A stretch of DNA of 64,000 nt from Macrostomum hystrix. Taxonomy: Eukaryota > Animalia > Platyhelminthes. Positions 17,017 to 34,675 of this stretch are shown here, in pieces. The position numbers were made by a program, and so were the translations under genes. The DNA lies in contig CATNEN010000029.1 of the NCBI GenBank assembly GCA_950097015.1, positions 6,634,001-6,698,000 on the forward strand, in the 5' to 3' direction. Below the pieces are notes generated by a model, which was not told the origin of the DNA, did no database searches, and saw nothing but the letters and a program-made list of their open reading frames with translations. Numbering within the stretch: the stretch's first letter is position 1; each line of letters opens with the position of its first letter.

Positions 17017-17184
17017 GTAATAATTTATCTACTGCAGCTAAATTAATTTTTAAATAGAAAAGTAGTAAACTGGAAAAGGCACGAACAAATTAATGGCTTC
17101 TTCTGTGCTGTCAACCGTCTTCTATTTTATTAGTTTATTAGTTTATTAGTTTTTTAATCAAGGATTCCAGTGGCACATTAGCAC

Positions 17185-17495
17185 ACACAGACACTCACAC
17201 ACAGACACTCACACACAGACACTCACACACACAGACACTCACACACACACTCACACACACAGACACTCACACACAGACACTCACACACAGACACTCACAC
17301 ACAGACACTCACACACAGACACACACACAGACACTCACACACAGACACTCACACACAGACACTCACACACAGACACTCACACACAGACACACACACAGAC
17401 ACTCACACACACAGACACTCACACACAGACACTCACACACAGACACTCACACACAGAGACACTCACACACAGACACTCACACACAGACACTCATT
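17185..17495. repeat. 14-bp ACACAGACACTCAC array
   Basis: Visible tandem array. Confidence 0.9.
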
Positions 17496-17749
17496 GCGTC
17501 TCTCTCTCTGTGTGGCACTCTCGCGTGCGGCCTTGTCTATCGGCTTCTCGCAGTTCCCATGAGAAATAAACGGAGAGAGAATAGAAGAGAATGAGAGGGG
17601 GGGTATGGACGCCGTTCTCCTGCGGTCATCGAATTCCGAGTCTGCTCAACCGGCTCATCGGTCCCTGGGTTTTCCGCGCTAGAAGAACAGGAAGGGAAAC
17701 TGCAGTTCGCCACTGGGCACCCCAGTTCTAGCAAGTTATTAGGGGTGCA

Positions 17750-18300
17750 ACTCATTGATCCACCAATCCACTCATTGATCCACCAATCCACTCATTGATC
17801 CACCAATCCACTCATTGATCCACCAATCCACTCATTGATCCACCAATCCACTCATTGATACACCAATCCACTCATTGATCCACCAATCCACTCATTGATC
17901 CACCAATCCACTCATTGATCCACCAATCCACTCATTGATCCACCAATCCACTCATTGATCCACCAATCCACTCATTGATCCACCAACCCACTCATTGATC
18001 CACCAATCCACTCATTGATCCACCAATCCACTCATTGATACACCAATCCACTCATTGATACACCAATCCACTCATTGATACACCAATCCACTCATTGATA
18101 CACCAATCCACTCATTGATACACCAATTCACTCATTGATCTACAAATCCCTCATCCATCTATCCATTCATTCATCCATCCATCCATCCATCCATCCATCC
18201 ATCCATCCATCCATCCATCCATCCATCCACTCATTGATCCATCCATCCATTCATCAATCTATCTATCCATCAATCCATCCATTCATCAAGCCATCAATCC
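17750..18300. repeat. 20-bp CTCATTGATCCACCAATCCA array followed by (CATC)n
   Basis: Visible tandem arrays. Confidence 0.9.
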
Positions 18301-19953
18301 AGGTTTCCGTCAATCAATCAATCAGTCCATTCATTTAGCAATGCAAAGCAATCTGCCTATCAATCAAGCCATGCTGAATCCAGCACAAGCTAGGCAGCAT
18401 CAACATGATTTTCAAGCTCAAATTTTTCATGTTAGAAACATCCTCATCAATTTTCGTCAGCCGGGGTCGCACAGCTCCCTTTCAAAATGAGGATTTGTCT
18501 GGGCGCGAAAAAATTGAGTTAGCATGGCTTAGCCTGCTTCCTCGGTGCCCCCGAGGAAGACGCCGCAGCTCCATCAGCCTCGCCGCTCAGTCTTTTCTGA
18601 TTTGAGGCGGCCCGACTCATTTTCTTGCGTTGCCTTCTAATTATTTAGGGGCCGCCGGCACAGCGGATGGTCGGGCCGGCTATTTCCTTTGTTGAGCCCT
18701 CTATCAAGCTTTACTAGTCTCTAAGGACAGATTCCGTGTGGGGATTATGGGAAATTCGCCGAGAGAAGGTAAAACGAAATATGCTTTTCCATGCGTTTTG
18801 AGACGCAGTTTACTATGCAGAGGCTTAGGGCTCAGGGCAATGAGAAATATCAGTGATCCTCAAGGAAGCTAAGCTAATTGGCTTTCTGGGATTTCAGGTC
18901 TCAATCTCGGAGGGGAAATCGTTAAAATGACAAGAGGTGAGGCAGTTGAAAGCAGATTACTGAGTTTAGCTGATTATGGGGAAACAGAGAAACACGTGCC
19001 TATAAATTTTGTAGGACATTTCACAGGATATAACAGCGTCACGCTACTGTTAGTAACTCGCTATGTACGAAATGCTATACTTGACAGTAGAAAGACCACG
19101 AAGGCCTTTCAAACGCGCCCATTTTTATTTTTCTGTATCTCCCAATCGCCATGAAAATGCAGAACACGGCCTAAAATGTGTCGCTCAATCCAATGAAACA
19201 ACTTCCAGAATCACGGAACATCAGCATTGTCGAGATATTCAACGATTCTCGTCGGGGGGTGTGTGGTAGTGCATAAATTTTCTGCTCACAGAAAGTCATA
19301 GTGTAGCTATATCGGATATCATTCTTAACTATTTTGGATTGATAAAATTTAAATCTTTTTAATTTTTTTAACCAAAATGGATTCGCCAATATAAGCCAAA
19401 AAAGGTTTTATCCACTGTTGAAGAGCTACAACACTGGAATTTCTTCAACTTATTGTTTTATAAATTATTCCCGCGTTTTAATTTAGGATGTGGGCGCAGG
19501 ACATCATTTGCGAGACAAATTTGTTCAGTTAGAAGCATATTTGTTGGCAGAGCCAAACAGATAACTGGGCAGTGGCCAAGCGGAGTAACGACACGCTTGG
19601 CTACTGTTCATCTGTTTGGTTGAGGCAAATTTGCATTACTGGCGTGGTGAGCAAACAGACATTGCGTGGCAATAATAGCCTCAGCAGTCTGCAACCAGGA
19701 AATTGGCCAGGCATCCCGTGGCACGTTCCCATAATTGAAAGCAATGAGGCGACTGCTTATGGAAGAAATATATAGAAATGTCAGAAGCAACGTCATTATT
19801 AAGTTAGACAAATAGTCAATAGACTAATATACTTGTAAATTTGACGGACGCATTACCTAAATTAGGTAGCTCGATTGGTCAATAAATATTAGTGTGGATA
19901 CCAAAAATATTGCAAATTGCTGAAAATATTTTGAGAACGCATTACGAATTGTG

Positions 19954-22029
19954 ATGGAAGCTGAACAGGGAATAGAAGGTGAGCATCGGTTTGACCCGCT
20001 GCTGTCAGCACAGCTCACCCACTGCATTGAGTCGGACGATGTGCCCCAGATGCTGACGGTGCTCTCTGAAGCTGGACTCACCGTCGAGCACCTCGGCGGA
20101 CATCTCTCCTCCGACACTGACCAGTCGTCGCGACGCACCTGCTGGAGATCATCGCGTCCCGCATCCTCATCGCACAGAGTCAGCTTCAGCAGAGTGCCTC
20201 ACCTGAGCATGCTCATGCAGAGCTCACAGGTGCTGAGCTTCATCTCATCTGAGCATCCTCACCTGCTGGCGACGCTGGATGACTCGGGCTGTGGTGTGCT
20301 GCACTGTCTGGCGATGGCGAGTGTGCTGCGGAGAGAGAGCGCCAGCGGCAGTGGGCAGTCGGCGGCATTTGAGACGTTCCAGACTCGCCTGTTTCGCATC
20401 CTGAGCGATGCCGAGAGTCCGTGCTCGGAGCAGCAGTGAGTAGCCACTGACATTGAGACGTCTGCAGTCTCACCTAAGCTCGCATTCCACATGCAGCCCT
20501 AACGCTCAGCTTCATGCACAATGTCCACCGATTTCAGGTCGACTCAGAGTCTACTGCACTCGCTCTGTCTCATTGAGAACTCGACTGGTCTGAGAGCGCT
20601 CGAGTTCTCTGTCCTCATCGGAGCATACTCCACATTCCAGTGCATCCTCAATGTTGAGGGATACATTCTGACGAAGCAGGTGAGCCACGGCATTCGAGTT
20701 CGCAGCACCTTCGACCTGCGAGAGTACGACCTGATGCAGGGCGATCGACGGGACAAGAATCCCATGCTGATGCTGACGCTGATCTCGACGGAGCAACTGG
20801 AACTTCTCGTGCAGTCGAGGCTTCTCGATTTACAGCTTGTTAGCAAGTGGATCAAAGTCATCGATGACAGCATGTGTTTCATTGTCTCCACAATGAATAT
20901 TGTTCCTCCGGCTGTTGGAAGCGTTTTTGGTGTTTACTCTTTCACATTTATTGTGGTGGCTTCGATGTTACAGGGCGGCTATTACTTGGAGAAGGGATTC
21001 TATGAGTACGGCCGCATTTTGAAGTCCACTTTGGGATCTCAGAGCGTCAATGCTTCAGTAGTGCATCAGTACTGCACGCCGGACCGTATCATTGAGTACC
21101 TACTAAATGCTTCTAATCCAAGCAACATTGCAGTACGCATGACCTCACCCATATCCTGGAGCAACATCTCACGCCTGCAAGCTGTTATGCACAGAAAGTT
21201 GGTTCTGTACTTTCTGTGTCCAAGCTTGTGCGTCCAGTTGCTTGTCATCGTATATAGTCTACTGAAGGATCGCCATTTTTTCTCGCTAAGCTGGATGCCC
21301 CGCTGCACCACATTCGTTGTGCAGTCCAATTTTTACCTGACCGCCTATTTCCTCAACTGTTGCTGCGGTCTCATCTACTGTGCGGTGGCTATGCAGTTTG
21401 AAAATGCACTGGACTGCTCAAGCTTCGTCCTTGGCATTGAGCTGGACAACTGGCGGCTAGCTCTCCTGACAAACATCGCCGAGTGCTCAGCGGCGCTGTT
21501 CGCCTTCTTTGACATTCTGTCTTTGATTGAAGGCTACGAGCTGATTTGGAAGCCCTTAGCCTTTATGGCAATCTGCTTTCGTCAGATGCTGGCCAAGTTC
21601 ATTCTGGTTCTGCCGCTGCTGCTTTGTTGGAGTTACCTCATATTTGGTACAATGTTCTACCTGACCGACATAGCAGGCCAGGAGTTCAAAAAGTCCAGCG
21701 ACATTTTCTACTCGCCTCTACGCATTATGATGAACATGGCTAGCCTGCCGCAAAGACCGACAGTATGCATTCTGCACTCGATCTTTGCGCTGATTGTCAG
21801 CGTCAACATTGCCAACTTCATCATCGCATTCATATCGAACGCTTTCAACGAGGTTGCTTCGAAATTCGACACCCTGTTTCCCCTATTCGGACTGAACCGG
21901 TCGCTCAGAGGATGGAGGCTCTACGCCTTCCTGCTCAGATTGTTTCACAGCAGATCCCGTTCGGGTGCCCAATCGCAGACCAGGTGGGTTGTCAAGACGT
22001 GGAGCCTGAAGCAACCAGGTGCACTGTGA
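19954..22029 (+). CDS. TRPV-like channel copy 1 (ankyrin + 6TM). Two in-frame ORFs (19954-20439, 20521-22029) separated by a broken intron allele
   Basis: DDSGCGVLHCLA resembles the TRPV ankyrin motif DSRGNTVLHALV. ENSTGLRALEFSVLIG..FQCI and FDLREYD match the TRPV linker. S1-S6 hydrophobic pattern with pore helix FYSPLRI and S6 NFIIAFISNAF. Donor GTGAGT at 20436, but the acceptor is CAT instead of CAG and there is an in-frame TAA at 20500. Confidence 0.7.
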
Positions 22030-22280
22030 AAAATTTTGGCAGCCGGAAGATAGGACAAGCTCGAGTACTTGATTAGAGATCTTTTGGGGTGCAGTCTGCA
22101 TCAGATTGATGACAGTGACTACCAAAACAGTCATTTCTGACTTTTTTCCCAATGTTAAATCTATCTACTGAAATATTATTTAAAGTTAGTAAATGGCCCA
22201 TAGGGATTTCTTGCGGGAAAATTGCTTCGCGAAATAAATAAACTCAGTTGGTTCAGATTTGTCGTCGAAAGCCTACCAGC

Positions 22281-22510
22281 TTATACATTTATTGCGCGGC
22301 GCATCTGAAGGCTGCGTACGGCTGTTCAGTCCAGGGACTGGGGGACGCCACACCCACCCTCAATTACCCGAGATAGTGCTGGTAGCCATTTAACAGCTGT
22401 GGGAACTGAAACAATGAAGAGTCAAATGTCTTGCTAAATGACGCAAATTGTTGGGAATCGAACCTCAGACCTTCAAGTCGAGAGTCCGACGCTCCGCTAG
22501 GCTACAGTCC
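22281..22510 (-). mobile_element. tRNA-derived SINE with CORE-like central domain
   Basis: Minus strand: A-box TAGCCTAGCGG, B-box GTTCGATTCC, then GCAAGACATTTGAC...TCAGTTCCCACAGCTGTTAAATGG, resembling the MIR/CORE consensus (GCAAGTCACTTAAC...TCAGTTTCCTCATCTGTAAAATGG, recalled from memory). Ends GCGCAATAAATGTATAA. Confidence 0.7.
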
Positions 22511-23091
22511 GAATCTCGTCAGTGCGCAACAGCCGATAACTGCATTAAACACTAAGTTTAAGAATGTTGACTGCGCAAATTTAAATTGATGCAAAAATTA
22601 CATCAGAGCACAACTCAGAAAGCAAAACGAAAGTATGAGTCTGAGATAAAGTAAGAACTATCAGATTAAACCGAACAAGCATAGCTCTAAATTAAATTAA
22701 TCATTATCCAAAGCTTTGGTTGACACTAACCAAACGTTTGCGCTTCTATTAATTAACATCAGGCAGTGCCTGGCATAAATCAGTTTGAGATAATTACAAC
22801 AGCCCGCAATATTCAATCTGGCATGCCGACAGGAAGTTTGTTCGCCAGAGGCCAGGCATCCCGTGTCACGTCCCATAATTGAAAACAATGAGGCGACTGG
22901 TTATGAAAGAAATATATGGAAATAGCTGAAGCAACGTCATTATTAATTTAGACAAAAAGTCAATCTACTAATATAGATTTGACGGACGCATTACCTAAAT
23001 TAGGTAGCTCGATTGGTCAATAAATATTAGTGTGGATACCAAAAATATTGCAAATTGCTGAAAATATTTTGAGAACGCATTACGAATTGTG

Positions 23092-25206
23092 ATGGAAGCT
23101 GAACAGGGAATAGAAGGTGAGCATCGGTTTGACCCGCTGCTGTCAGCACAGCTCACCCACTGCATCGAGTCCGACGATGTGCCCCAGATGCTGACGGTGC
23201 TCTCTGAAGCTGGACTCACCGTCGAGCACCTCGGCGGACATCTCTCCTCCGACACTGACCAGTCGTCGCGACGCACCTGCTGGAGATCATCGCGTCCCGC
23301 ATCCTCATCGCACAGAGTCAGCTTCAGCAGAGTGCCTCACCTGAGCATGCTCATGCAGAGCTCACAGGTGCTGAGCTTCATCTCAGCTGAGCATCCTCAC
23401 CTGCTGACGACGCTGGATGACTCGGGCTGTGGTGTGCTGCACTGTCTGGCGATGGCGAGTGTGCTGCGGAGAGAGAGCGCCAGCGGCAGTGGGCAGTCGG
23501 CGGCATTTGAGACGTTCCAGACTCGCCTGTTTCGCATCCTGAGCGATGCCGAGAGTCCGTGCTCGGAGCAGCAGTGAGTAGCCATTGTCATTGAGACCTC
23601 TGCAGTCTCACCTAAGCTCGCATTCCACAGGCAGCCTCAACGCTCAGCTTCATGCACAATGTCCACCGATTTCAGGTCGACTCAGAGTCTACTGCACTCG
23701 CTCTGTCTCATTGAGAACTCGACTGGTCTGAGAGCGCTCGAGTTCTCTGTCCTCATCGGAGCATACTCCACATTCCAGTGCATCCTCAATGTTGAGGGAT
23801 ACATTCTGACAAAGCAGGTGAGCCACGGCATTCGAGTTCGCAGCACCTTCGACCTGCGAGAGTACGACCTGATGCAGGGCGATCGACGGGACAAGAATCC
23901 CATGCTGATGCTGACGCTGATCTCGACGGAGCAGGCGGACTCGCTGGTTCAGTCGAAGCTACTCGGCTCTCCCATTGTTAAGAAGTGGATCAATACAATT
24001 GAAGCCGACATGCGCTCAACCGGGATGTTAAAGAGCGTCTTCATTCCCACTGTCGTTGGTTGTCTGAGTCCCATGACATCCGCTTTCGTAGGTGTGACGA
24101 GTCTTGTTCAATTCGGTCACTTGTTGGAGATGGGCTACAATGAGTACGTTAGCATCCTGAGGTTACAGCTTTCTGCCTCGGCCCACATGGCTTTAAATGT
24201 CACGGTTGAGGAGGCCGAGATGTTTGTGAAATTTCGCTGCTCCACCAGAGCGGTTTTGACTTTCCTGTCCAACCGAACGAATCCTGCCAACAGGGCGGTG
24301 ATCAGCACATCACCGATTTATCAGACCAACGTCAGACGTTTTGAAGTGTTCGAGTCACCTCTAATTGTAACTATGGTGGTAGCCGTCTACCTGCTTATTC
24401 AGATGGTAATTATTTTGCACAGGTCGATATTAGGCTGCTGCACTCATCGTTGGACACCACGCCGGTGGAACTACCTCGTGCAGAGTAGTTTCTATGACAA
24501 CGCATTTTTATTAAGCTTCATCTGCGGTCTGCTGGTAGTGGTTTCTCGATTCCTGATGATGTCAGAGCTGAACTGCTCAGACTACATCCTGGGGCCCGAA
24601 GTTGATAACAATCGCCTACGTGCTCTCGCGACTGCCTCAGAGTGTGCAGCTGTGCTGTTCGTGTTCTTCAATCTGTTCAGCTTCTTTGAGGTCTACGAGA
24701 CGGTCCTGAAACATGTTGCCTTCATGAGCATCTGCTTTCGTTGGATGCTGGTCAAGTTTGTTCACGTGCTGCCGCTGCTTCTGTTCTGGGCCTACCTTGT
24801 ATTCGGAACAATGTTTTACATGGTCGACCTCAAGGGCCACGAGTTCAAATCGCAGTTTGATGTTTTCTACTCGCCTCTGCGCCTAATCACCAACTTGGCT
24901 CAGCTGTCACCTGGCGTCCCGACAGTTTTCCTGCACTCGCTGTTTGTTCTAGTCGTGACCATCAACATCAGCAATCTAGTGATTGCGTACATTCTGAATG
25001 CCTTCAAAGATGTGGCAGCCAAGTTCGACGTAGTTTACGACCTGTCCAGGCTGAATTGCGCATTGAAGACTTGGCAGTTCTATTCTTTCCTGACCAGACT
25101 GGGGCGCAGCTGTTCCAGTGATCAGGCTTCAGGCTATCTCCTGGCTGTTTGGAACCTGCGACAACCAATGAGCTGGCCGAACTCTGCTCAAATACACAGG
25201 CATTGA
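23092..25206 (+). CDS. TRPV-like channel copy 2, intact: exons 23092-23573 and 23631-25206
   Basis: 57-nt GTGAGT...CCACAG intron (23574-23630, phase 2) joins the two ORFs in frame as ...SEQQ-QPQRSASCT-MSTDF... Same TRPV motifs as copy 1. Confidence 0.85.
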
Positions 25207-25319
25207 GGCTTGCTCAACCATTCAGAGCATACGCATACGTACGGCAGCTCGCTTGCATCACAAGGATTGACTAAAACAGTGAACGGTTGTTGTTCCGTCA
25301 TCCTTTGTTATAATCTGTG

Positions 25320-25500
25320 CACGATGAGTATTTAGCTCTAACCGAAGGTCAGGAGTTCAAATCTCAGCCCAAGGGAAGCGATTGGGGAAGAAATTTGGGG
25401 GGAGGAATGTGGTGGCCTCCAGTCAAAACCCAGTCCATGGACTAAACAGTAGTACACACTGGCCTTACATGAGACCTAAAAGAGTTAGTTGTAATTTCTA
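25320..25500 (+). mobile_element. Degenerate SINE related in its 3' part to the 22.3-kb SINE
   Basis: B-box-like GAGTTCAAATC at 25353-25363. CCCAGTCCATGGACTAAACAG (25429-25449) matches CCCAGTCCCTGGACTGAACAG in the 22.3-kb element. Confidence 0.5.
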
Positions 25501-25664
25501 TCTTCTATTTTATTACAATGATACGCTCTCTGGTATGACATTATACTCGAAATGTCGAAAATTATTTTCCATCAAAATTATAATAGTAAATATAACATCC
25601 ATACACTAAAGAGTGCGTGCTTGCACAGAAAATTTTTCTCGAAATTCGAGGCGCATTAAAAAGT

Positions 25665-25935
25665 TTATTTTTTGGTTTTTCCTAAACTTTTAACAATCGC
25701 CAAATAGAACATGAAAACCATATGGTTAAAGTGCTTATCCGAGTAGTAATTTGATATATAGCCTGCTGACACTCCAACCTCTTCTGCCAGCTCTTGGCAT
25801 GTCCGTCGCCGATCATCATCCAGGAGCTCTTGGACTTTCTTCATCACTTTCTCGTTGGTGGCAGTCATTGGCCGTCCAGAACTATCATTGTCTTCGATGC
25901 TTTTTCTCCCTTTGGTGCGTTGCAGCCAAAAGCTT
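25665..25935 (-). mobile_element. Mariner (Tc1/mariner) transposase remnant, DNA-binding region only
   Basis: GRKSIEDNDSSGRPMTATNEKVMKKVQELLDDDRRRTCQELAEEVGVSAG matches the mariner linker/second HTH pattern GRESxEDxxRSGRP...VxxLxxxDRRxTxRELAEEVGIS. No DD34D catalytic domain visible. Confidence 0.75.
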
Positions 25936-26267
25936 AGCAAAGCCGTTGAGCATTTAGTTAATCTCTGTTTACCTCGCAGGAGAGCTAACATGATAGAATG
26001 ACCAATCGACCAATGTTGACCAAGTTAAACAAATAGGCTATATGAAACTGACTGTTTCAAATTATTATTGCGAGCATGACTCGTCAAACTGTGCCCAATA
26101 ATCTGAAGCCGAGTAGCTGATAAAAGAATCACTACCCGGGTCATTGGCAACAGCAGTGCCTTGCTGGACAGGTGATAAGAGAGGAGGAAAGCCTGATTAG
26201 ACGACATCATTTGAAATTTCTTCTAGTGAGCTAAATCGAAGCCCACAGCACTGGCCCATTGTCTGCC

Positions 26268-28386
26268 ATGAGAGTATCGGACATCGGAACAGGGACGAAT
26301 GAAGACTTCAGCAATTGGCGCTTCCATCCGCTGCTGTCAGCACAGCTCACCCACTGCATTGAGTCGGACGATGTGCCCCAGATGCTGACGGTGCTCTCTG
26401 AAGCTGGACTCACCGTCGAGCACCTCGGCGGACATCTCTCCTCCGACACTGACCAGTCGTCGCGACGCACCTGTTGGAGATCATCGCGTCCCGCATCCTC
26501 ATCGCACAGAGTCAGCTTCAGCAGAGTGCCTCACCTGAGCATGCTCATGCAGAGCTCACAGGTGCTGAGCTTCATCTCAGCTGAGCATCCTCACCTGCTG
26601 ACGACGCTGGATGACTCGGGCTGTGGTGTGCTGCACTGTCTGGCGATGGCGAGTGTGCTGCGGAGAGAGAGCGCCAGCGGCAGTGGGCAGTCGGCGGCAT
26701 TTGAGACGTTCCAGACTCGCCTGTTTCGCATCCTGAGCGATGCCGAGAGTCCGTGCTCGGAGCAGCAGTGAGTAGCCACTGACATTGAGACGTCTGCAGT
26801 CTCACCTAAGCTCGCATTCCACATGCAGCCCTAACGCTCAGCTTCATGCACAATGTCCACCGATTTCAGGTCGACTCAGAGTCTACTGCACTCGCTCTGT
26901 CTCATTGAGAACTCGACTGGTCTGAGAGCGCTCGAGTTCTCTGTCCTCATCGGAGCATACTCCACATTCCAGTGCATCCTCAATGTTGAGGGATACATTC
27001 TGACAAAGCAGGTGAGCCACGGCATTCGAGTTCGCAGCACCTTCGACCTGCGAGAGTACGACCTGATGCAGGGCGATCGACGGGACAAGAATCCCATGCT
27101 GATGCTGACGCTGATCTCGACGGAGCAGGCGGACTCGCTAGTTCAGTCGAGACTGCTTTGTTCTCCGATAATTAAGAAGTGGATCAAGGAGGTGATTCAG
27201 GACATGAATTGCACATTTTCGGTAAAGCGCTGCTTTCACTCCACATTCTGCGCCACGTTTAGCCCGATAAGTGTACGATTTTTGGCCATTGCTTCCATGC
27301 TGCGGATTGGCTACGAGTACGAGTCTGGGTTCTTCAGGTACGCCGAGTTCCTCAAGTCCCGGATGAACTCCAGCGGCTCGGAATCCTCCTCGGCATACAA
27401 CGCCTCTGAACTCAGCCGGCTTTGCAGTTCCTCCAGTCTGCAGCATTTCCTAACGGACGAATTGCAGCCCGAAAACATGGCCCTTGTTGTGTCATCTCCC
27501 ATCGGAACGGGCTTTTTTAGTCGCCATGATATCGTTTCGTTTGCAGTCTCCGTTCCCACAAACATAGCCAGCTTCGCATTCGTGCAGCTGATTATTGTGC
27601 TTTATAATTTCCTGCGAGACCTGCAACTCACTCGCTGCGATTGGATGCGAGCCATCCGCGGCAGGAGCTACCTGGTGCAGAGCAGCTTCTACAACCGCGC
27701 TATGGGCGTCTGCTTCTGCTCGTCACTTCTGCTCGAGGTAGTCTTTATGCACTTTGACTCAGTTCTAGACTGCACTGCATATGTCAGCGGCAACGTGCAG
27801 CGCAGTGCTAGCTTGTCGCTGATGGTTCTACTGTTCGAGTGCAACGCTGTGCTGTTCGTCATGCTGAATATGTGCAGCTTGATTGACGCCTATGAGATGG
27901 TAGGCCATCAGGTGGCATTTCTCAACATCTGTTTTCGCCGCATTCTGTCGGGATTCCTTCCTACGCTGCTTCTGCTGCTAATCTGGGCCTACTTGGTGTT
28001 CGGGACTCTGTTCTACATTGCTGACTTCAAGGGCGAAGCGTTCAGCGGGCCGCAGGACGTGTTCTACACTCCATTGCGCATTCTGGTCAACACAGCCAAC
28101 CTGCCGCACAATCTGCCTACTGCCGGTGCTACACTCGCTCTTTGCACTGGCGGTGAGCATCAACGTGCAGAACTTTTTCATCGCCACCCTGTCCAAGGAG
28201 TTCGCCACGGCCGCCGAAATGTTTGACGCCATTTACCAGCTGTCCCTGCTCAACTGCTCTATGCGCACCTGGAGACTGTACGCCTTCCTGACCAGGTGCT
28301 GGCGGTTCTGCTGTAACAGGCGTGGGGTGGGGCGCCACACCTGGGTTCTTCGTGTCTGGAGTCTGAAAATGTCTCATTACAAATAG
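26268..28386 (+). pseudogene. TRPV-like channel copy 3, apparently disrupted (broken intron allele plus a +1 frameshift near 28125)
   Basis: Same intron allele as copy 1 (acceptor CAT, in-frame TAA). The homologous C-terminus (VLHSLFALAVSINVQNFFIA...WRLY) continues in the frame of ORF 28018-28386 after an extra base in GCCGGTG. The frameshift could be an assembly error. Confidence 0.65.
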
Positions 28387-28624
28387 CTACTCAAAATTTA
28401 TGCCAGAAAACAGCAATCTATAAAATTTCCATTACGAATTTTCGCTGACGATTGTGTTAAAGGTGTTGATTTTGTATATTTTGCGAATAAAAAAAGGCTT
28501 GGAGTTTCTGAAGTTAATTCTCTCTACGAGTATTAGGCCTCGATTCCCAAGTTCCAGGAACTGACCATTGCAATACGAGCTCAACAGTGTTTTTTTTCGA
28601 ACGAATTAAAGATGCAAAATAGTG

Positions 28625-28905
28625 AATAATATTAATAATAATAATATTGCTAGAGGGCTGCGGGAAATTGGTGGGCAGTTCGGCCCATTTCCGCTGACTC
28701 CTCAGCACACACGCACACAGGTGTGTACACTTACTCTGACCTTCTCATTGTCAGGCGAAGTACACTTTCACTGTGCCTTGGAGTTGGCCCTTTGGGGCGT
28801 AATTTGCACGAAAAGCAACTGCCCCAAATGAATTTGGCCTCTCCGCGGAATCGAGCTCATGGACGTTGTTGCGAGAAGCAAATGCGTTAGACCGCTCTGC
28901 CGCTT
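28625..28905 (-). mobile_element. tRNA-derived SINE with (ATT)n tail
   Basis: Minus strand: A-box-like GGCAGAGCGGTCTAACGC, degenerate B-box GAGCTCGATTCC, non-tRNA body, ending ATTATTATTATTAATATTATT. Confidence 0.6.
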
Positions 28906-29298
28906 ATCCCTCACACAGGAGTGAAGCTTAATCAATAAATTTTTGTTGCTTTCTTATTTCGGTCAGTGCTTAAGCTAAAAAATCAGCATCTAGCTTATCT
29001 TACGTCAACAACAATTAATTTTACAATTGATAAACTGACTAGGCAAACAACTGCTTGGTGAGCGAAACCACATGCAAGCTTCAATTCTGCAGATTAGGGC
29101 TGGCCAACAAACCAGGCTCATGCAAACAAGCTGTGGTCAGGTCGAAGACCTAATCATTCTAATGCTTGTTGCATAAACTCCAACCAACCCAGACCAAGCA
29201 AACAGGATGCCTTGGACGTACAAATTTGAGGCGTTTGATGGATAATTAGATTGGATAGAGCCAATACTGTTATGCCCATTGCATGACTGTGCAAGATT

Positions 29299-31389
29299 AT
29301 GGCACAGCCATCGGATCATAGAGTCTTTGACCAGCTGCTGTCTGCACAGCTGACCCACTGCATCGAGTCCGACGATGTGCCCCAGATGCTGACGGTGCTC
29401 TCTGAAGCTGGACTCACCGTCGAGCACCTCGGCGGACATCTCTCCTCCGACACTGACCAGTCGTCGCGACGCACCTGCTGGAGATCATCGCGTCCCGCAT
29501 CCTCATCGCACAGAGTCAGCTTCAGCAGAGTGCCTCACCTGAGCATGCTCATGCAGAGCTCACAGGTGCTGAGCTTCATCTCAGCTGAGCATCCTCACCT
29601 GCTGACGACGCTGGATGACTCGGGCTGTGGTGTGCTGCACTGTCTGGCGATGGCGAGTGTGCTGCGGAGAGAGAGCGCCAGCGGCAGTGGGCAGTCGGCG
29701 GCATTTGAGACGTTCCAAACTCGCCTGTTTCGCATCCTGAGCGATGCCGAGAGTCCGTGCTCGGAGCAGCAGTGAGTAGCCATTGTCATTGAGACCTCTG
29801 CAGTCTCACCTAAGCTCGCATTCCACAGGCAGCCTCAACGCTCAGCTTCATGCACAATGTCCACCGATTTCAGGTCGACTCAGAGTCTACTGCACTCGCT
29901 CTGTCTCATTGAGAACTCGACTGGTCTGAGAGCGCTCGAGTTCTCTGTCCTCATCGGAGCATACTCCACATTCCAGTGCATCCTCAATGTTGAGGGATAC
30001 ATTCTGACGAAGCAGGTGAGCCACGGCATTCGAGTTCGCAGCACCTTCGACCTGCGAGAGTACGACCTGATGCAGGGCGATCGACGGGACAAGAATCCCA
30101 TGCTGATGCTGACTCTGATCTCGACGGAGCAGGCGGACTCGCTGGTTCAGTCGAGACTGCTTTGTTCTCCGATAATTAAGAAGTGGATAAAGGCTGTCAA
30201 TAATGAAATGGAGTTTCCGATGTACTTACAAAAGGCGGGCCTAGTGTTTTTTTCGCTATTGTTCTCACCGATTTCCTTCGCATTCGAGCAGCCTGCCTCC
30301 ATGCTCCGCACCGGCTATCAGTTGGAGACAGGCTTCCTAGAGTACTCAACCTACCTGAGGGCTGAGCTGTGGCCCAACAGGTCCATGCATAACGCATCTA
30401 CCATTGAGTTGGAGATTCGCAGGAACTGTCAGGCGCATCAGGTGCGCGGCTTCCTCATGGCGGACTCTCACCCAGCCAATCGGCAGGCGTTGCTGAACTC
30501 GCCCGTGTCCTCGCAGGCGGTCACTCGCAAGAGCATCATAGTGAATTCAGTGAACGTTCTGATCATCCTGGGCATATTCCAGGCCTTCAGACTGGCTACA
30601 ATCGTTCTCAGCTTCGTCAAAGACTGGCAGTTCTCGACCTGCAAATGGATGCCAGCTCGCCGCTCGAAGCGAATCGTTCAGACAAAGTTTTTTGACGTCG
30701 CCTACGGGCTTTGCTTCTGCACGGGTGTGCTGTACATCACACTGGCTGTTCAGTTTGACAACTACTTAGACTGCTCAGACTATCTGCTTGGCGTGTCAAG
30801 TGACCGCTCAGCGCTGACACGGTTAGTCCATTGCGCCGAGTGCAGCGCCGCTCTGTACTTCTTTTTCAACATGTTCGGCCTATTCGAAGCGTACGAGACG
30901 GTTGTGAAACAGGCCGCCTTCCTCAGCATCTGCTTTCGCAAGATGCTGGTCAGCTTTCTGCTGGTGCTGCCGCTGCTGCTGCTGTGGGCCTACGCTGTGC
31001 TCGGAAACCTGCTGTACATGACCGACTACAAGGGCCAGGAGTTCAGCTCGCACCTGAGCGTCTGGTACTCGCCGCTGCGCCTGATTGTCAACATGGCGAG
31101 CGTGCCGCATACTCCGTCCAGCTGCCTGCTCCACACGCTGTTTATTCTCACAGTCAGCATTGGCGTTCAAAACTTCATCGTCGGCTACATTGTTAACGCG
31201 TTCAAGGACGTCGCTTCGAAATTCGACATCGTATTTTATCTGAGTAGGTTGGCTTCCGCTATGAAAACCTGGCGCCTGTACCCGGGACTGCTCAGACTGA
31301 CCAGGCTGCTCAGTAGTTCTCTTGGCATGCGACGCGGTGAAAATTTAATTCGTGTCTGGAGCCTAAGAACTAAATTAGCTAAGCTCTGA
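29299..31389 (+). CDS. TRPV-like channel copy 4, intact: exons 29299-29771 and 29829-31389
   Basis: 57-nt GTGAGT...CCACAG intron (29772-29828) joins the ORFs in frame. Ankyrin-like motif, linker and 6TM region present. AATAAA at 31572-31577. Confidence 0.85.
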
Positions 31390-31869
31390 GGTGATCTGGT
31401 AACTGGGAACAGAATATCGATAAACTGAACTGGTGAAAGGCTGTGACTGAATTCTTACTGGATGTTGTTCGCAGCGTATGATCAGCTGGTGCCACCCGTT
31501 GAAGGTCCAGAAACTCCGTCCAGGTGAAGGCAGTAGGCACGGAAGGCTGAGAAGATGATGCAGACACATTTAATAAACTATCAGATGAACTCTAAACACT
31601 TGACAAAGCTCTACTGAGGTGCAGTGCTGATCGGCATGCAAGGGTATCCACCCTTTGACCCTTCGAATGATCTCCTTGATATTCTGCGGTTAAAAATTTA
31701 TGCCAAGCTATTAGTTTACGCTTAAATTGTAGCTCCTATCTTTCGTAAAAGCGCCATTTTTAGTTTTTTTATTCTTTAAATGTTTTCATTCCTTTAAATC
31801 TTCCCACATCGTCCTGCCTCTTCCCCATTCCCCATACCCTTCCCCATTTCTACCGTTTCTGCACTTTTT

Positions 31870-33110
31870 CCAATCTTATCTCAACCCCAATACCATCTCT
31901 ACCCCAATCACATCTCTTTCCCAATCACATCTCTTACCCATTTCTGAATCCTTCCCAATCCCATCTCTTCCCCATTTCTGAATCCTTCCCAATCCCATCT
32001 CTTCCCCATTTCTGAATCCTTCCCAATCCCATCTCTTTCCCAATCCCATTTCTTTCCCAATCCCTTCTCTTTCCCAATCCCATCTCTTTCCCAATCCCAT
32101 TTCTTTCCCAATCCCATTTCTTTCCGAGTCCCATCTCTTTCCCAATCCCATTTCTTTCCCAATCCCATTTCTTTCCCAATCCCATTTCTTTCCCAATCCC
32201 ATCTCTTTCCCAATCCCATCTCTTCCCCATTTCTGAATCCTTCCCAATCACATCTCTTCCCCATTTCTGAATCCTTCCCAATCCCATCTCTTCCCCATTT
32301 CTGAATCCTTCCCAATCCCATCTCTTCCCCATTTCTGAATCCTTCCCAATCCCATCTCTTCCCCATTTCTGAATCCTTCCCAATCCCATCTCTTTCCCAA
32401 TCCCATTTCTTTCCCAATCCCTTCTCTTTCCCAATCCCATCTCTTTCCCAATCCCATTTCTTTCCCAATCCCATTTCTTTCCCAATCCCATCTCTTTCCC
32501 AATCCCATTTCTTTCCCAATCCCATTTCTTTCCCAATCCCATTTCTTTCCCAATCCCATCTCTTTCCCAATCCCATCTCTTCCCCATTTCTGAATCCTTC
32601 CCAATCCCATCTCTTCCCCATTTCTGAATCCTTCCCAATCCCATCTCTTCCCCATTTCTGAATCCTTCCCAATCCCATCTCTTTCCCAATCCCATTTCTT
32701 TCCCAATCCCTTCTCTTTCCCAATCCCATCTCTTTCCCAATCCCATTTCTTTCCCAATCCCATTTCTTTCCGAGTCCCATCTCTTTCCCAATCCCATTTC
32801 TTTCCCAATCCCATTTCTTTCCCAATCCCATTTCTTTCCCAATCCCATCTCTTTCCCAATCCCATTTCTTTCCCAATCCCATCTCTTTCCCAATCCCATC
32901 TCTTTCCGAGTCCCATCTTTTCCCCAATGCCATCTCTTTCCCTAATCCCATCTCTTTCCCAATCCCATCTCTTTCCGAGTCCCATCTTTTCCCCAATGCC
33001 ATTTCTTTCCCTAATCCCATTTCTTTCCCAATCCCATTTCTTTCCCAATCCCATTTCTTTCCCAATCCCATTTCTTCCCCAATCCCATCTCTTCCTCAAT
33101 CCCATCTTTT
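31870..33110. repeat. 17-bp TCCCAATCCCATYTCTT minisatellite
   Basis: Visible tandem array with a longer variant unit. Confidence 0.95.
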
Positions 33111-33714
33111 CCATATATCTGAATCTTCCCTAATCCCGTGTGGGAAAAGAATCAAGGCCAATGAAAAAAGGCTTCCACGTTGGAAACATACAATTCGATC
33201 ATGGGCACTAATTTCAATCGGGTGCGGAGTAAATTTATTTATTTACAGCAGAATCTAAAACACAAGCAACAAGGAGAGTCGGTCATAATAAGCGCGCAGC
33301 ATTTTAAATTACGAGCCGTGGATGAAAAAGATGAGAATTTCTGATTTGCTAAAGCATTACAATTATTGCCTCCCGGCAATATGAATTGTCGTTTGCAGCT
33401 ATGAACAATCAAATAAAAACAGCATAACGTAGCGGTAAAAATATTATTTAGCAGGTAAATAGCATCGTATAGAACTGTGTATTATATATGTTTAAATATA
33501 GATTTGCAAATCAATTTGAACTATAGAATAGAATAATAAAAATCGAATGACCGAGAGAACATAATTTTTAACAGACCGTTTGCTCAGCAACTATTTTGTT
33601 TTGCTCTCGTGGTCTTCAAAAATAACTAAAATAGGAGATATTCGGAACGGGATTTCTTGAAACGTGATTTTTAATTATTTTTTTAATAGGATCGGGATAG
33701 AGTTGGGATTCCAT

Positions 33715-34200
33715 CGACTTGGGATTTCACCGATTAGGGATTTTATCTTTTTGGGATTTTATCTTTTTGGGATTTCATCGATTTAGGGATTTCATCATGT
33801 TGGGATTTTATCTATTAGGTATTTTATCTATTAGGGATTTTATCTATTAGGGATTTTATCAATTTGGGATTTCATCGATTTAGGGATTTCATCATGTTGG
33901 GATTTTATCTATTAGGGATTTTATCTATTAGGGATTTTATCTATTTGGGATTTTATCTTTTTGGGATTTTATCTATTACGGATTTTATCTATTATGGATT
34001 TAATCTTTTAAGGATTTTATCAATTTGGGATTTCATCGATTAGGGATTTTATCTATTAGGGATTTTATCTATTAGGGATTTTATCTATTAGGGATTTTAT
34101 CTATTAAGGATTTTATCAATTAGTGATTTTTTCTATTAGGTATTTAATCGATTAAAGATTTAATCAGTTATGGATTTCATCGATTAGGGATTTTGTCAAT
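33715..34200. repeat. 16-bp GGGATTTTATCTATTA array
   Basis: Visible tandem array downstream of Post2. Confidence 0.9.
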
Positions 34201-34675
34201 TCGTCATTTTCTCCTCATAAATTTAGGTTAAAAGATAGTTGCTAATTTCACAGAGAGTTAGCAATGAGGTCTCGGTCCCACGAAATTCTGCCTACAGATC
34301 CGGAAGCGTTTACAAAGCAATCAGTGCATAAAGAGACGAGACATAACTTAACTCCATTGCCCACTGCATTCACCTGTCCAATTAGCATTCGCATATGGGA
34401 AAGTGTTGAAAACGCATAAGAGGAAGAAAACTTTCTCTCAAAGACGGCTGCAAATAGGTGACAAAAAATTTCTGGAGACGAATGACACCGTAAGGTATTG
34501 GGCTAGGAGGTCACCTTGCATCATTTGTGCATCATTTATGCATGTTGTATATGCGAGCTAAATATATATATTGAGAGACAGAATTGTTGAGGAAAAAATC
34601 CCAGTAGTTTTAGTTTCTTAAAGATTGTGCCTCATCTGTACAGTGTGAATTTCCGGGTGCTTCCAGAGAGGATTG

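What the first reader, a model, noticed from the sequence alone, without database searches (positions are those of the whole stretch)
19996..31389. Four TRPV-like genes built as constant 5' block plus variable transmembrane half
Seen: an ~800-bp block (copy 1 19996-20795; others start 23134, 26328, 29332) encoding LLSAQLTHCIESDD...LISTEQ is nearly identical in all four genes, including synonymous sites. Immediately after it the proteins diverge sharply. My hand count for copies 1 vs 4 gives about 55% amino-acid identity in the best-conserved S4-pore segment, and far less in S1-S2. Known: TRPV ankyrin and linker domains mediate inter-subunit assembly and gating. Inference: old paralogues whose cytoplasmic assembly module is kept uniform while the sensing/pore half diversifies, which could allow combinatorial heterotetramers. 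This could be an undescribed constant/variable ion-channel chemoreceptor system.
Basis: partly seen in the sequence, partly recalled or inferred. Interest (0 to 1): 0.9.

Follow-up and report, generated by a model that had tools for sequence, protein, structure and literature searches.

The report
Tandem TRPV-like genes with gene-converted 5' block
Four neighbouring, very old copies of a divergent TRPV-type ion-channel gene in a Macrostomum-like flatworm share an almost identical 800-base front part because that part keeps being copied between them (gene conversion); this is real and tidy, but it is a known kind of genome behaviour and not a demonstrated new receptor system.

Summary
Four head-to-tail genes on the + strand each carry an 800-nt block (19996, 23134, 26328, 29332) that is 98.1-99.5% identical, including a 102-nt GT..AG intron. 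Block dS is 0.012-0.048. Downstream dS is 1.2-1.9 and amino-acid identity is 36-41%. Public read contigs support the assembly. The block has about 3.6 times the flanking depth, a two-copy haplotype has about twice that depth, and an RNA-like contig runs from the spliced block into variable half 2.

The genes are a long-branch clade of TRPV-like channels. Pfam is blank on them, but a family profile hits TRPV6/5/3/4 at about 1e-39, and a pLDDT 84 model matches only TRPV1-6.

Identity at neutral sites, staggered tract ends, incompatible SNP groupings and a frameshifted copy that is still homogenised all point to regionally restricted interlocus gene conversion. Selection on the protein does not explain them.

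The heterotetramer/chemoreceptor reading is untested. It is weakened by unchecked scan notes that report similar mosaics in many unrelated gene families of this genome, including another TRPV-like locus.

Verdict: a new member of a known kind, of moderate interest.

The parts
19954..22029 (+). Gene 1, a TRPV-like channel of 657 aa. Exon 1 is 19954-20435, the intron 20436-20537 and exon 2 20538-22029.
   Evidence: ORFs. Donor GTGAGT, acceptor TTTCAG and a frame that stays open. Exon 1 product aligns collinearly with the N-terminus of the Macrostomum lignano homologue P0057, and exon 2 product with the following part. RNA-like contigs cover the variable half.
23092..25206 (+). Gene 2, 670 aa. 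Exon 1 is 23092-23573, the intron 23574-23675 and exon 2 23676-25206.
   Evidence: An X3 contig of 786 nt joins 23573 to 23676 (skips 102, GT..AG) and continues to 24006 in the variable half. An X4 contig shows the same joint.
26268..28386 (+). Gene 3. Exon 1 is 26268-26767, the intron 26768-26869 and exon 2 starts at 26870. The reading frame breaks around 28110-28125, just before S6. S6, the TRP helix and the C-terminal strand continue in another frame to 28386. This is either a pseudogene or an assembly or allelic indel.
   Evidence: tblastn places residues 410-497 of gene 1 at 28096-28368 in a second frame.
29299..31389 (+). Gene 4, 662 aa. Exon 1 is 29299-29771, the intron 29772-29873 and exon 2 29874-31389.
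   Evidence: The structure model of its exon 2 product has pLDDT 84.1 and pTM 0.81.
19996..20795 (+). Homogenised block, copy 1. It codes for residues about 15-246: the ankyrin-like region, the intron, the last ankyrin-like helices, the beta-hairpin and the first linker helix.
23134..23956 (+). Homogenised block, copy 2. Identity with copies 3 and 4 runs 23 nt beyond the copy-1 boundary.
26328..27184 (+). Homogenised block, copy 3. Identity with copy 4 runs about 57 nt beyond the copy-1 boundary, with one mismatch.
29332..30188 (+). Homogenised block, copy 4.
19705..19995 (+). Upstream extension of the tract, shared only by genes 1 and 2 (partner 22850-23133). It is 100% identical for the last 150 nt and about 93% over 291 nt. 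It covers the start codon, the first 14 codons and the promoter-proximal DNA.

Best explanation
The locus is a tandem array of four anciently duplicated genes. They belong to a lineage-specific, very divergent TRPV-like cation-channel subfamily in a Macrostomum-like flatworm.

An 800-nt 5' segment is kept almost identical in all four by recurrent, DNA-templated interlocus gene conversion (concerted evolution). It holds most of exon 1, the only intron and the first 258 nt of exon 2. It encodes the cytoplasmic ankyrin-like region, the beta-hairpin and the first linker helix.

The rest of each gene, from pre-S1 through S1-S6, the TRP helix and the C-terminus, escaped conversion long ago. So did the spacers. 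All of it has diverged to saturation.

Shown here: the pattern, its reality in independent reads, splicing and expression of at least genes 1 and 2, and the TRPV-like fold.

Inferred: the tract is self-sustaining, because identity permits conversion and conversion renews identity, and it stops where roughly 50% divergence blocks heteroduplex formation. The segment that stayed competent for conversion includes the most slowly evolving part of the family, which is where most database relatives match best.
For: 1. Neutral sites are homogenised. Block dS is 0.012-0.048 against 1.24-1.92 downstream. The 102-nt intron differs at 0 or 6 sites between copies, while the spacers cannot be aligned.
2. 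The boundaries lie inside continuous homologous coding sequence. Residues just upstream of the block are still recognisably homologous (RFDP / RFHP / VFDQ), so no foreign insertion is involved.
3. The 3' ends are staggered by pair: +800 for copy 1, +823 for copy 2 against copies 3 and 4, and +857 for copy 3 against copy 4. Only the copy 1-2 pair extends 150-291 nt upstream.
4. SNPs are mosaic. Eight sites group copies 1 and 3 against copies 2 and 4, and one site groups 1 and 4 against 2 and 3. This fails the four-gamete test. Neither grouping matches the variable-half tree, which is gene3,(gene4,(gene1,gene2)).
5. Gene 3 has a frameshift before S6, yet its block is 99.5% identical to copy 1.
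6. GC3 is somewhat higher in the block (0.73-0.74) than in the variable half (0.63-0.71).
7. Read contigs show about 3.6-fold depth on the block and about 2.2-fold on the haplotype shared by copies 1 and 3. Contigs also bridge block to variable half and spacer to block.
8. Family assignment. Fifty-six HMMER relatives were found, the best from Macrostomum lignano at 6e-23. Relatives carry Ion_trans. The family profile hits TRPV6/5/3/4 at about 1e-39 over one stretch from the ankyrin repeats to the TRP helix. All of the top 50 Foldseek PDB matches are TRPV1-6. Protein-language-model features of exon 1 point to ankyrin clusters at 0.96.
Against: - No sister-species comparison shows the classic signature in which paralogues within a species are more alike than orthologues.
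- Three different upstream sequences all meet the block at the same nucleotide. The tract-limited-by-homology model explains this, but does not prove it.
- The higher GC3 of the block is modest and could reflect composition.
- The run types are guessed. X2-X4 behave like RNA, but their records do not say so.
- The block's ends roughly coincide with a structural domain boundary, so some role of selection in fixing the boundary cannot be excluded.
Confidence: 0.85

Rival explanations
1. A functional constant/variable system. Selection favours an identical cytoplasmic assembly module so that the four channels can co-assemble into mixed tetramers, while S1-S6 and the large S1-S2 loop diversify for sensing. 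Gene conversion would be only the tool.
For: - The block encodes the parts that form the cytoplasmic inter-subunit contact in solved TRPVs, namely the ankyrin domain against the neighbour's beta-sheet. This is established TRPV structural knowledge. The mapping comes from the model and the matches.
- The block ends near a domain boundary.
- Genes 1 and 2 are both transcribed in the same whole-animal data sets.
- An unchecked scan note reports another TRPV-like locus with a shared ankyrin half and unique S1-S4.
Against: - Identity is equal at intron and synonymous sites.
- A frameshifted copy is homogenised too.
- Unchecked notes report the same kind of mosaic for EGFR, ovo, odd-skipped, TPMT-like, TEP, ceramidase and EPDR paralogues in this genome.
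- dN/dS in the variable half is about 0.3-0.47 with saturated dS, so no sign of positive selection can be extracted.
- There are no co-expression or co-assembly data.
Confidence: 0.15
2. A single recent replacement event, such as template switching, unequal exchange or an element-borne exon, put one 800-nt segment in front of four old TM halves. On this view there is no ongoing conversion.
For: All copies share the same 5' breakpoint, and their 3' breakpoints lie within 57 nt of each other.
Against: - Two intron haplotypes differing by 6% are each shared by non-adjacent copies. Incompatible SNP groupings and pair-specific tract ends need several events.
- Homology continues across both boundaries.
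- There are no terminal repeats or element features at the ends.
- Reads show further block haplotypes and reshuffled variants in other samples.
Confidence: 0.06
3. An assembly or polishing artefact, in which one block was copied in silico onto four different genes.
For: Repeats of 800 nt at 99% identity are a classic place for collapse or over-polishing. The best DNA holder may be the same sample as the assembly.
Against: - Block contig depth is 281 against 74-85 in the flanks, and the two-copy haplotype has depth 171.
- A contig links variable half 2, the spacer and block 3.
- An RNA-like contig from a different study links spliced block 2 to variable half 2 (all).
- The copies carry their own private SNPs.
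Confidence: 0.02
4. Purifying selection alone, meaning an extremely constrained protein or nucleotide sequence, keeps the block identical.
For: The exon 2 part of the block is the best conserved region of the family. Most of the 56 relatives match best at query positions 9-140.
Against: dS is 50-100 times lower than next door, and the intron is identical within haplotype pairs. The exon 1 part is poorly conserved in the family, at 31% identity to M. lignano with Pfam blank, yet it is equally homogenised.
Confidence: 0.01

Closest known systems
TRPV channels (vertebrate TRPV1-6; invertebrate OSM-9/OCR and Nanchung/Inactive; flatworm TRPV homologues reported for Macrostomum lignano, Schmidtea and Dugesia in PMC5196486)
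   Same: Same overall architecture and fold: N-terminal ankyrin-like region, linker beta-hairpin, pre-S1, S1-S6 with a pore helix, a helix after S6 in the TRP-helix position, and a C-terminal strand. The family profile hits TRPV6 at 1.2e-39, and all of the top 50 fold matches are TRPV1-6.
   Different: - There is no direct Pfam or PDB sequence hit for the four proteins. The clade sits on a stem branch of 2.8 substitutions per site.
- The N-terminal region is only about 160 aa, with no Pfam-recognisable ankyrin repeat.
- The S1-S2 extracellular insert is about 80 residues long and carries N-glycosylation sequons.
- The position aligned with the TRPV6 selectivity-filter Asp is S/Q/N/S, and the outer pore loop is shorter.
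- The TRP-box motif is degenerate.
- Channel activity is untested.
Domain-restricted gene conversion in clustered protocadherin variable exons (Noonan et al. 2004, as summarised and re-measured in PMC4978886)
   Same: Both are tandem arrays of membrane receptor genes in which conversion homogenises one part of the coding sequence (EC4-6 and beyond) and spares the specificity-determining part (EC2-3). In both cases the pattern is diagnosed by regional dS differences.
   Different: - In the data seen here the largest ratio of highest to lowest dS between protocadherin domains is about 5, while here dS differs 50-100 fold with a boundary sharp to tens of nucleotides.
- Here the homogenised part is cytoplasmic and includes an intron.
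- Protocadherins also have truly shared constant exons joined by splicing. Here each gene carries its own copy of the block.
Mosaic gene conversion between paralogues elsewhere in this same genome (scan notes, for example EGFR paralogues s1-258399 and a second TRPV-like locus s1-270690)
   Same: Near-identical tracts are embedded in anciently diverged paralogues, and the 'hypervariable' parts are old and not fast-evolving.
   Different: Those are AI notes that I did not check. The families and geometries differ (inverted pairs, intronless genes). Here there are four tandem copies with one common tract.
Classical partial concerted evolution of tandem duplicates (human gamma-globin, RHD/RHCE and red/green opsin genes; from general knowledge, not tested here)
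   Same: Conversion tracts with defined ends homogenise part of the duplicated genes, introns included, while other parts stay diverged.
   Different: Those duplicates are young and similar throughout. Here the unconverted parts are saturated (dS above 1), so the contrast is far more extreme.

Membership tests
TRPV-type TRP channel | Six-helix transmembrane domain (S1-S6) with a re-entrant pore helix between S5 and S6, recognisable as an ion-transport domain | tested here: met
   The gene 4 model (pLDDT 84, pTM 0.81) has the expected helices. All of the top 50 Foldseek PDB matches are TRPV1-6, with TM about 0.5 over about 520-550 columns. HMMER-linked relatives pass the Pfam Ion_trans cut-off. 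The four proteins themselves do not reach any Pfam threshold.
TRPV-type TRP channel | Sequence homology to TRPV, as distinct from other TRP subfamilies | tested here: met
   The link is transitive only. The profile of the four finds 56 relatives. The profile of the four plus 41 relatives hits TRPV6/5/3/4 at 1e-39 to 1e-31, as one stretch from the ankyrin repeats to the TRP helix. The four-sequence profile alone gives no PDB hit.
TRPV-type TRP channel | N-terminal ankyrin repeat domain (six repeats in vertebrate TRPVs) | tested here: inconclusive
   Pfam finds no Ank hit in the exon 1 product. Language-model features point to ankyrin clusters at 0.96, but recognition is below the usual level. 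The product aligns with the N-terminus of an M. lignano protein that UniRef names ANK_REP_REGION. The model shows one last ankyrin-like helix pair at the start of exon 2. There is room for at most about four repeats.
TRPV-type TRP channel | Linker beta-hairpin joined by a C-terminal strand, and a TRP helix after S6 | tested here: met
   The model has strands at 50-56 and 59-65, a helix at 456-474 directly after S6, and a C-terminal strand at 497-503. The family consensus carries an LQR motif at the TRP-box position, which is degenerate in the four genes.
TRPV-type TRP channel | Acidic selectivity-filter residue and cation conduction by a tetramer | tested here: not met
   The column aligned with the TRPV6 filter Asp is S, S, Q and N in the four genes. 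It is D in 21 of 45 family members. Conduction and tetramerisation cannot be tested with these tools.
Interlocus gene conversion / concerted evolution | Homogeneity at neutral sites (synonymous sites and intron) in a bounded tract between otherwise diverged paralogues | tested here: met
   dS is 0.012-0.048 against 1.24-1.92. The intron shows 0 or 6 differences in 102 nt. The spacers cannot be aligned.
Interlocus gene conversion / concerted evolution | Several events: pair-specific tract ends and incompatible site patterns | tested here: met
   Ends fall at +800, +823 and +857, and at -150 to -291 for the copy 1-2 pair only. Groupings 13|24 (8 sites) and 14|23 (1 site) coexist.
Interlocus gene conversion / concerted evolution | Paralogues within a species more alike than orthologues between species in the converted tract | not testable with these tools
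   Organism B (run X2) is nearly identical in the unique parts (1 difference in 1505 nt and 4 in 1474 nt) but differs at 8 of 517 nt in the block. Contigs cannot be assigned to copies.
Constant/variable receptor system with shared module (protocadherin- or UGT1-like) | One shared constant exon set joined to alternative variable exons by splicing | tested here: not met
   Each gene has its own block copy and its own start region. The only cross-gene joint (20435 to 23676 in X4) has a 31-nt side that is identical in genes 1 and 2, so it is the ordinary gene 2 intron.

The most novel reading that the evidence does not exclude
Conversion of the N-terminal cytoplasmic module is favoured by selection in this flatworm's expanded TRPV-like family. 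It keeps the ankyrin/beta-sheet inter-subunit interface interchangeable, so that tandem paralogues with very different S1-S4 and extracellular loops can form mixed tetramers. That would be a combinatorial sensory channel repertoire with a conversion-maintained 'constant region'. A second locus, reported in an unchecked note to share the ankyrin half while S1-S4 is unique, would be an independent instance.
Probability: 0.12. Interest if true: 0.75.

Novelty: new member of a known kind. Interest (0 to 1): 0.38.

Why it matters
It is an unusually clean natural example of regionally restricted concerted evolution. dS differs 50-100 fold across a boundary sharp to tens of bases, inside single exons of expressed genes, and an intron is carried along.

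It also marks a poorly annotated, long-branch TRPV-like subfamily in free-living flatworms that Pfam does not recognise. That matters for gene annotation and for studies of TRP evolution and flatworm sensory biology.

For family trees in this genome it is a warning. Different parts of one gene carry very different histories, and 'hypervariable' regions next to converted tracts are old and not fast-evolving.

If the selected-interface reading were right, it would give a testable model for how heteromeric channel repertoires are kept compatible.

Tried and rejected
- Direct identification failed. Pfam on the five ORF products was blank. The word-indexed homologue search gave nothing at E 0.01. 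The four-sequence profile against PDB sequences was blank. The first AlphaFold run with only four sequences was unusable at pLDDT 50. All of this was resolved with the exhaustive HMMER search and a 45-row alignment.
- No further copies of the block or family were found in the window. A findings search by sequence was blank.
- Relatives' loci (P0002, P0053, P0006) are single uninterrupted genes without tandem arrays, so they gave no comparative test of conversion.
- Cross-gene splicing, from exon 1 of gene 1 to exon 2 of gene 2, was considered and rejected as a mapping ambiguity.
- A second intron at the in-frame CAG|GTGAGC (20680, or 23818 in gene 2) was rejected, because the X3 contig is continuous there.
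- A cDNA-templated conversion was rejected because the intron lies within the tract.
- Positive selection on the variable half could not be assessed, because dS is saturated.
- The high-copy repeat at 22122-22509 is neither a tRNA nor any Rfam family.
- Literature searches found no report of gene conversion in TRP channel arrays or in Macrostomum.

Full report
**1. What is in the sequence**

Between 19954 and 31389 the + strand carries four head-to-tail genes at spacings of 3138, 3194 and 3004 nt. Each gene is made of two long ORFs separated by 102 nt. That gap begins with GTGAGT and ends with TTTCAG. Removing it keeps the frame open and gives products of 657, 670 and 662 aa for genes 1, 2 and 4.

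Gene 3 has the same structure, but its frame breaks around 28110-28125, just before S6. The rest of the protein (S6, the helix after it and the C-terminal strand) continues in another frame to 28386.

The two-exon model has outside support. The exon 1 product aligns with residues 76-176 of a Macrostomum lignano protein (P0057), and the exon 2 product aligns with residues 196-356 of the same protein, in the same order.

**2.

Pairs differ at 4-15 of 800 positions.

A sliding-window comparison shows about 100% identity through the block, intron included, and 45-65% immediately after it. Upstream and downstream DNA cannot be aligned.

| Measure (NG86, codon alignment) | Block | Variable half |
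|---|---|---|
| dS | 0.012-0.048 | 1.24-1.92 (saturated) |
| Amino-acid identity | 99-100% | 36-41% |

Identity by structural element of the variable half:

| Element | Mean pairwise aa identity |
|---|---|
| S1 | 19% |
| S1-S2 insert | 29% |
| S2 | 20% |
| S4 | 43% |
| S4-S5 linker plus S5 | 60% |
| Pore | 48% |
| S6 | 53% |

**3. It is not an assembly artefact**

I laid Logan contigs of four public runs on 19600-25400.

- In the DNA-like run X1, the block contig (23173-23933) has word depth 281. Unique flanking contigs have 74-85, a ratio of about 3.6.
- A 61-nt contig over the two sites that distinguish copies 1 and 3 from copies 2 and 4 has depth 171, about two copies.
- A 2433-nt X1 contig starts at 23927 and, by its length and the reported 'goes back to 19996' joint, ends about 32 nt into block 3. 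This links variable half 2, the spacer and block 3.
- Runs X2-X4 cover only the genes and not the spacers, and they contain contigs that lack the intron. They therefore behave as RNA, although their kind is not on record.
- An X3 contig of 786 nt covers 23119-23573, jumps to 23676 (skips 102, GT..AG) and continues to 24006, which is 73 nt into variable half 2. X4 shows the same joint.
- The variable halves of genes 1 and 2 are covered in X2, X3 and X4 at depth 2-9.

So at least genes 1 and 2 are transcribed, and gene 2's intron is spliced. The depth ratio also suggests that the genome holds about four copies of this block and not a large hidden family. This is a rough estimate, because contig depth is approximate.

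**4. What the genes are**

Direct searches fail. Pfam is blank, the word-indexed search is blank, and the four-sequence profile finds nothing among PDB sequences.

The exhaustive HMMER search with the four-sequence profile finds 56 proteins with E-values up to 0.001. The best is a Macrostomum lignano protein named ANK_REP_REGION (6e-23), and the list also includes a Lineus longissimus protein. Several of these relatives pass Pfam's Ion_trans threshold and show weak ankyrin hits.

A profile of the four plus 41 relatives hits TRPV6, TRPV5, TRPV3 and TRPV4 structures at 1e-39 to 1e-31. For TRPV6 the match is one stretch from the ankyrin repeats through S6 and the following helix.

With that alignment AlphaFold gives a confident model of the gene 4 exon 2 product (pLDDT 84.1, pTM 0.81). 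The model contains:
- an ankyrin-like helix pair;
- a beta-hairpin and linker helices;
- S1, then a helical extracellular insert of about 80 residues;
- S2 to S6 with a pore helix;
- a helix in the TRP-helix position;
- a C-terminal strand.

All 50 best Foldseek matches in the PDB are TRPV1-6. Language-model features agree: TRP clusters for exon 2 and ankyrin clusters for exon 1.

In a tree of the variable halves the four genes form a clade with 100/100 support. The clade sits on a stem of 2.8 substitutions per site, and its terminal branches are 0.5-0.8. This is a lineage-specific, old and very divergent expansion.

The genes differ from canonical TRPVs in several ways:
- a short N-terminus without Pfam-recognisable ankyrin repeats;
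- the large S1-S2 insert;
- a shortened outer pore loop;
- S/S/Q/N at the column aligned with the TRPV6 filter aspartate, which is D in 21 of 45 family members.

Free-living flatworms, including M. lignano, are reported to have TRPV homologues, while parasitic ones lack them (PMC5196486).

**5. How the pattern arises**

The evidence points to recurrent interlocus gene conversion confined to the 5' segment.

- **Neutral sites are homogenised.** This holds for synonymous sites and the intron. Protein-level selection therefore cannot be the cause. A cDNA template is also excluded, because the intron is inside the tract.
- **The boundaries lie within continuous homologous coding sequence.** The residues just before the block are still homologous at the old-paralogue level, and the proteins stay alignable after it. 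The block is therefore not an inserted element.
- **Tract ends differ by pair.** Copy 1 departs at +800, copy 2 from copies 3 and 4 at +823, and copies 3 and 4 from each other at about +857. Only copies 1 and 2 share a further 150 nt (100% identical) to 291 nt (93% identical) upstream.
- **The few SNPs are mosaic.** Eight sites, six of them in the intron, group copies 1 and 3 against 2 and 4. One site groups 1 and 4 against 2 and 3. Neither grouping matches the variable-half tree.
- **The frameshifted gene 3 is homogenised like the others**.
- **Block GC3 is slightly raised** (0.73-0.74 against 0.63-0.71). This is compatible with GC-biased conversion but is weak evidence.
- **Reads from other samples show more variation in the block than in the unique parts.** They carry a further block haplotype (four changes at 20350-20382) and reshuffled variants. 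In X2, 8 of 517 nt differ in the block, against 1 of 1505 and 4 of 1474 in the unique parts. This is expected when variants move among copies, although contig paths through repeats could also produce it.

Why the tract sits where it does is inference. The exon 2 part of the block is the best conserved region of the whole family. A majority of the 56 relatives match best at query positions roughly 9-140. That region would have stayed similar enough for conversion the longest. Once the neighbouring sequence passed the divergence that blocks heteroduplex formation, the boundary would become fixed and self-maintaining.

**6. Comparison with what is known**

Domain-restricted conversion in tandem receptor arrays is documented for clustered protocadherins. 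There EC2-3 are spared and EC4-6 are homogenised, and the pattern is diagnosed by regional dS (PMC4978886, citing Noonan et al. 2004). The present case is more extreme and sharper, but it is the same kind of process.

This locus is not a spliced constant/variable system of the protocadherin or UGT1 type. Each gene has its own block and its own start region. The one apparent cross-gene joint is a mapping ambiguity.

Unchecked notes of this scan report similar mosaics in many unrelated families of the same genome: EGFR, ovo, odd-skipped, TPMT-like, TEP, ceramidase and EPDR. They also report a second TRPV-like locus. If those notes hold, partial conversion is a general property of this genome.

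I found no paper describing conversion in TRP channel arrays or in Macrostomum.

**7. The functional reading**

In solved TRPVs the cytoplasmic contact between subunits is between the ankyrin domain and the neighbour's beta-sheet. This is established knowledge. Both sides of that contact, except the C-terminal strand, lie inside the block.

An identical block would therefore not hinder heteromer formation, and genes 1 and 2 are transcribed in the same whole-animal samples.

No data bear on cell-level co-expression, assembly, ligands or conduction. The non-acidic filter even leaves the ion selectivity open. I put this reading at about 0.12-0.15.

**8. Verdict**

This is a new member of a known kind and of moderate interest (0.38). 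It is a clean teaching-grade case of regional concerted evolution and a pointer to an unannotated flatworm TRPV-like subfamily.

Noticed in passing
window 22122-22509: A stretch in the spacer between genes 1 and 2 has word depth 1.4-2.0e5 in DNA-like run X1 and 500-1100 in the RNA-like runs, with many loose ends at 22290-22345. It is a very high-copy dispersed repeat. It occurs once in the window and is neither a tRNA (ARAGORN) nor an Rfam family.
   Followed up: partly
window 20436-20537, 23574-23675, 26768-26869, 29772-29873: The intron has two haplotypes that differ at 6 of 102 sites (copies 1 and 3 against copies 2 and 4). Both keep GTGAGT...TTTCAG. The copy 2/4 type is removed in RNA-like contigs of X3 and X4, so it is not a 'broken' allele. 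Removal of the copy 1/3 type could not be assigned to a copy.
   Followed up: partly
window 28110-28125: Gene 3 changes frame just before S6, in a stretch with repeated CTGCC motifs. The remaining 90 or so codons are intact in the other frame. It may be a recent pseudogene, an allele or an assembly indel.
   Followed up: partly
window 20350-20382 (equivalent to 23488-23520): Contigs of X1 and X2 carry four clustered changes (A>G, T>C, G>A, G>A) that are absent from all four window copies. X3 carries only the last one. These are further block haplotypes in other samples.
   Followed up: no
window 20678-20686 (and 23816-23824): An in-frame consensus donor-like CAG|GTGAGC lies inside exon 2. The X3 contig is continuous across the gene 2 equivalent, so it is not used there.
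   Followed up: yes
window 17126-17559, 17650-18368, 31764-33100, 33686-34247: Long minisatellite arrays with 14-, 20-, 17- and 16-nt units flank the four-gene array on both sides. The long minus-strand ORFs at 31908-33114 are just these repeats.
   Followed up: no
window 15405-16778: A GC-rich (0.6) ORF of 457 aa has several hydrophobic segments, an acidic run and polyQ/polyP. Pfam is blank. It may be a multi-pass membrane protein gene upstream of the array.
   Followed up: no
L001 3747-5621; L004 3030-5009: The database relatives P0002, P0053 and P0006 are single uninterrupted ORFs of 613-659 aa. The 102-nt intron therefore seems particular to the window's clade, and conversion could have spread it among the copies.
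   Followed up: no
pore region of exon 2, about 21720-21800 in gene 1: The column aligned with the TRPV6 selectivity-filter Asp is S, Q, N and S in genes 1-4, and the outer pore loop is 6-10 residues shorter than in relatives. Ion selectivity may differ from canonical TRPVs.
   Followed up: partly
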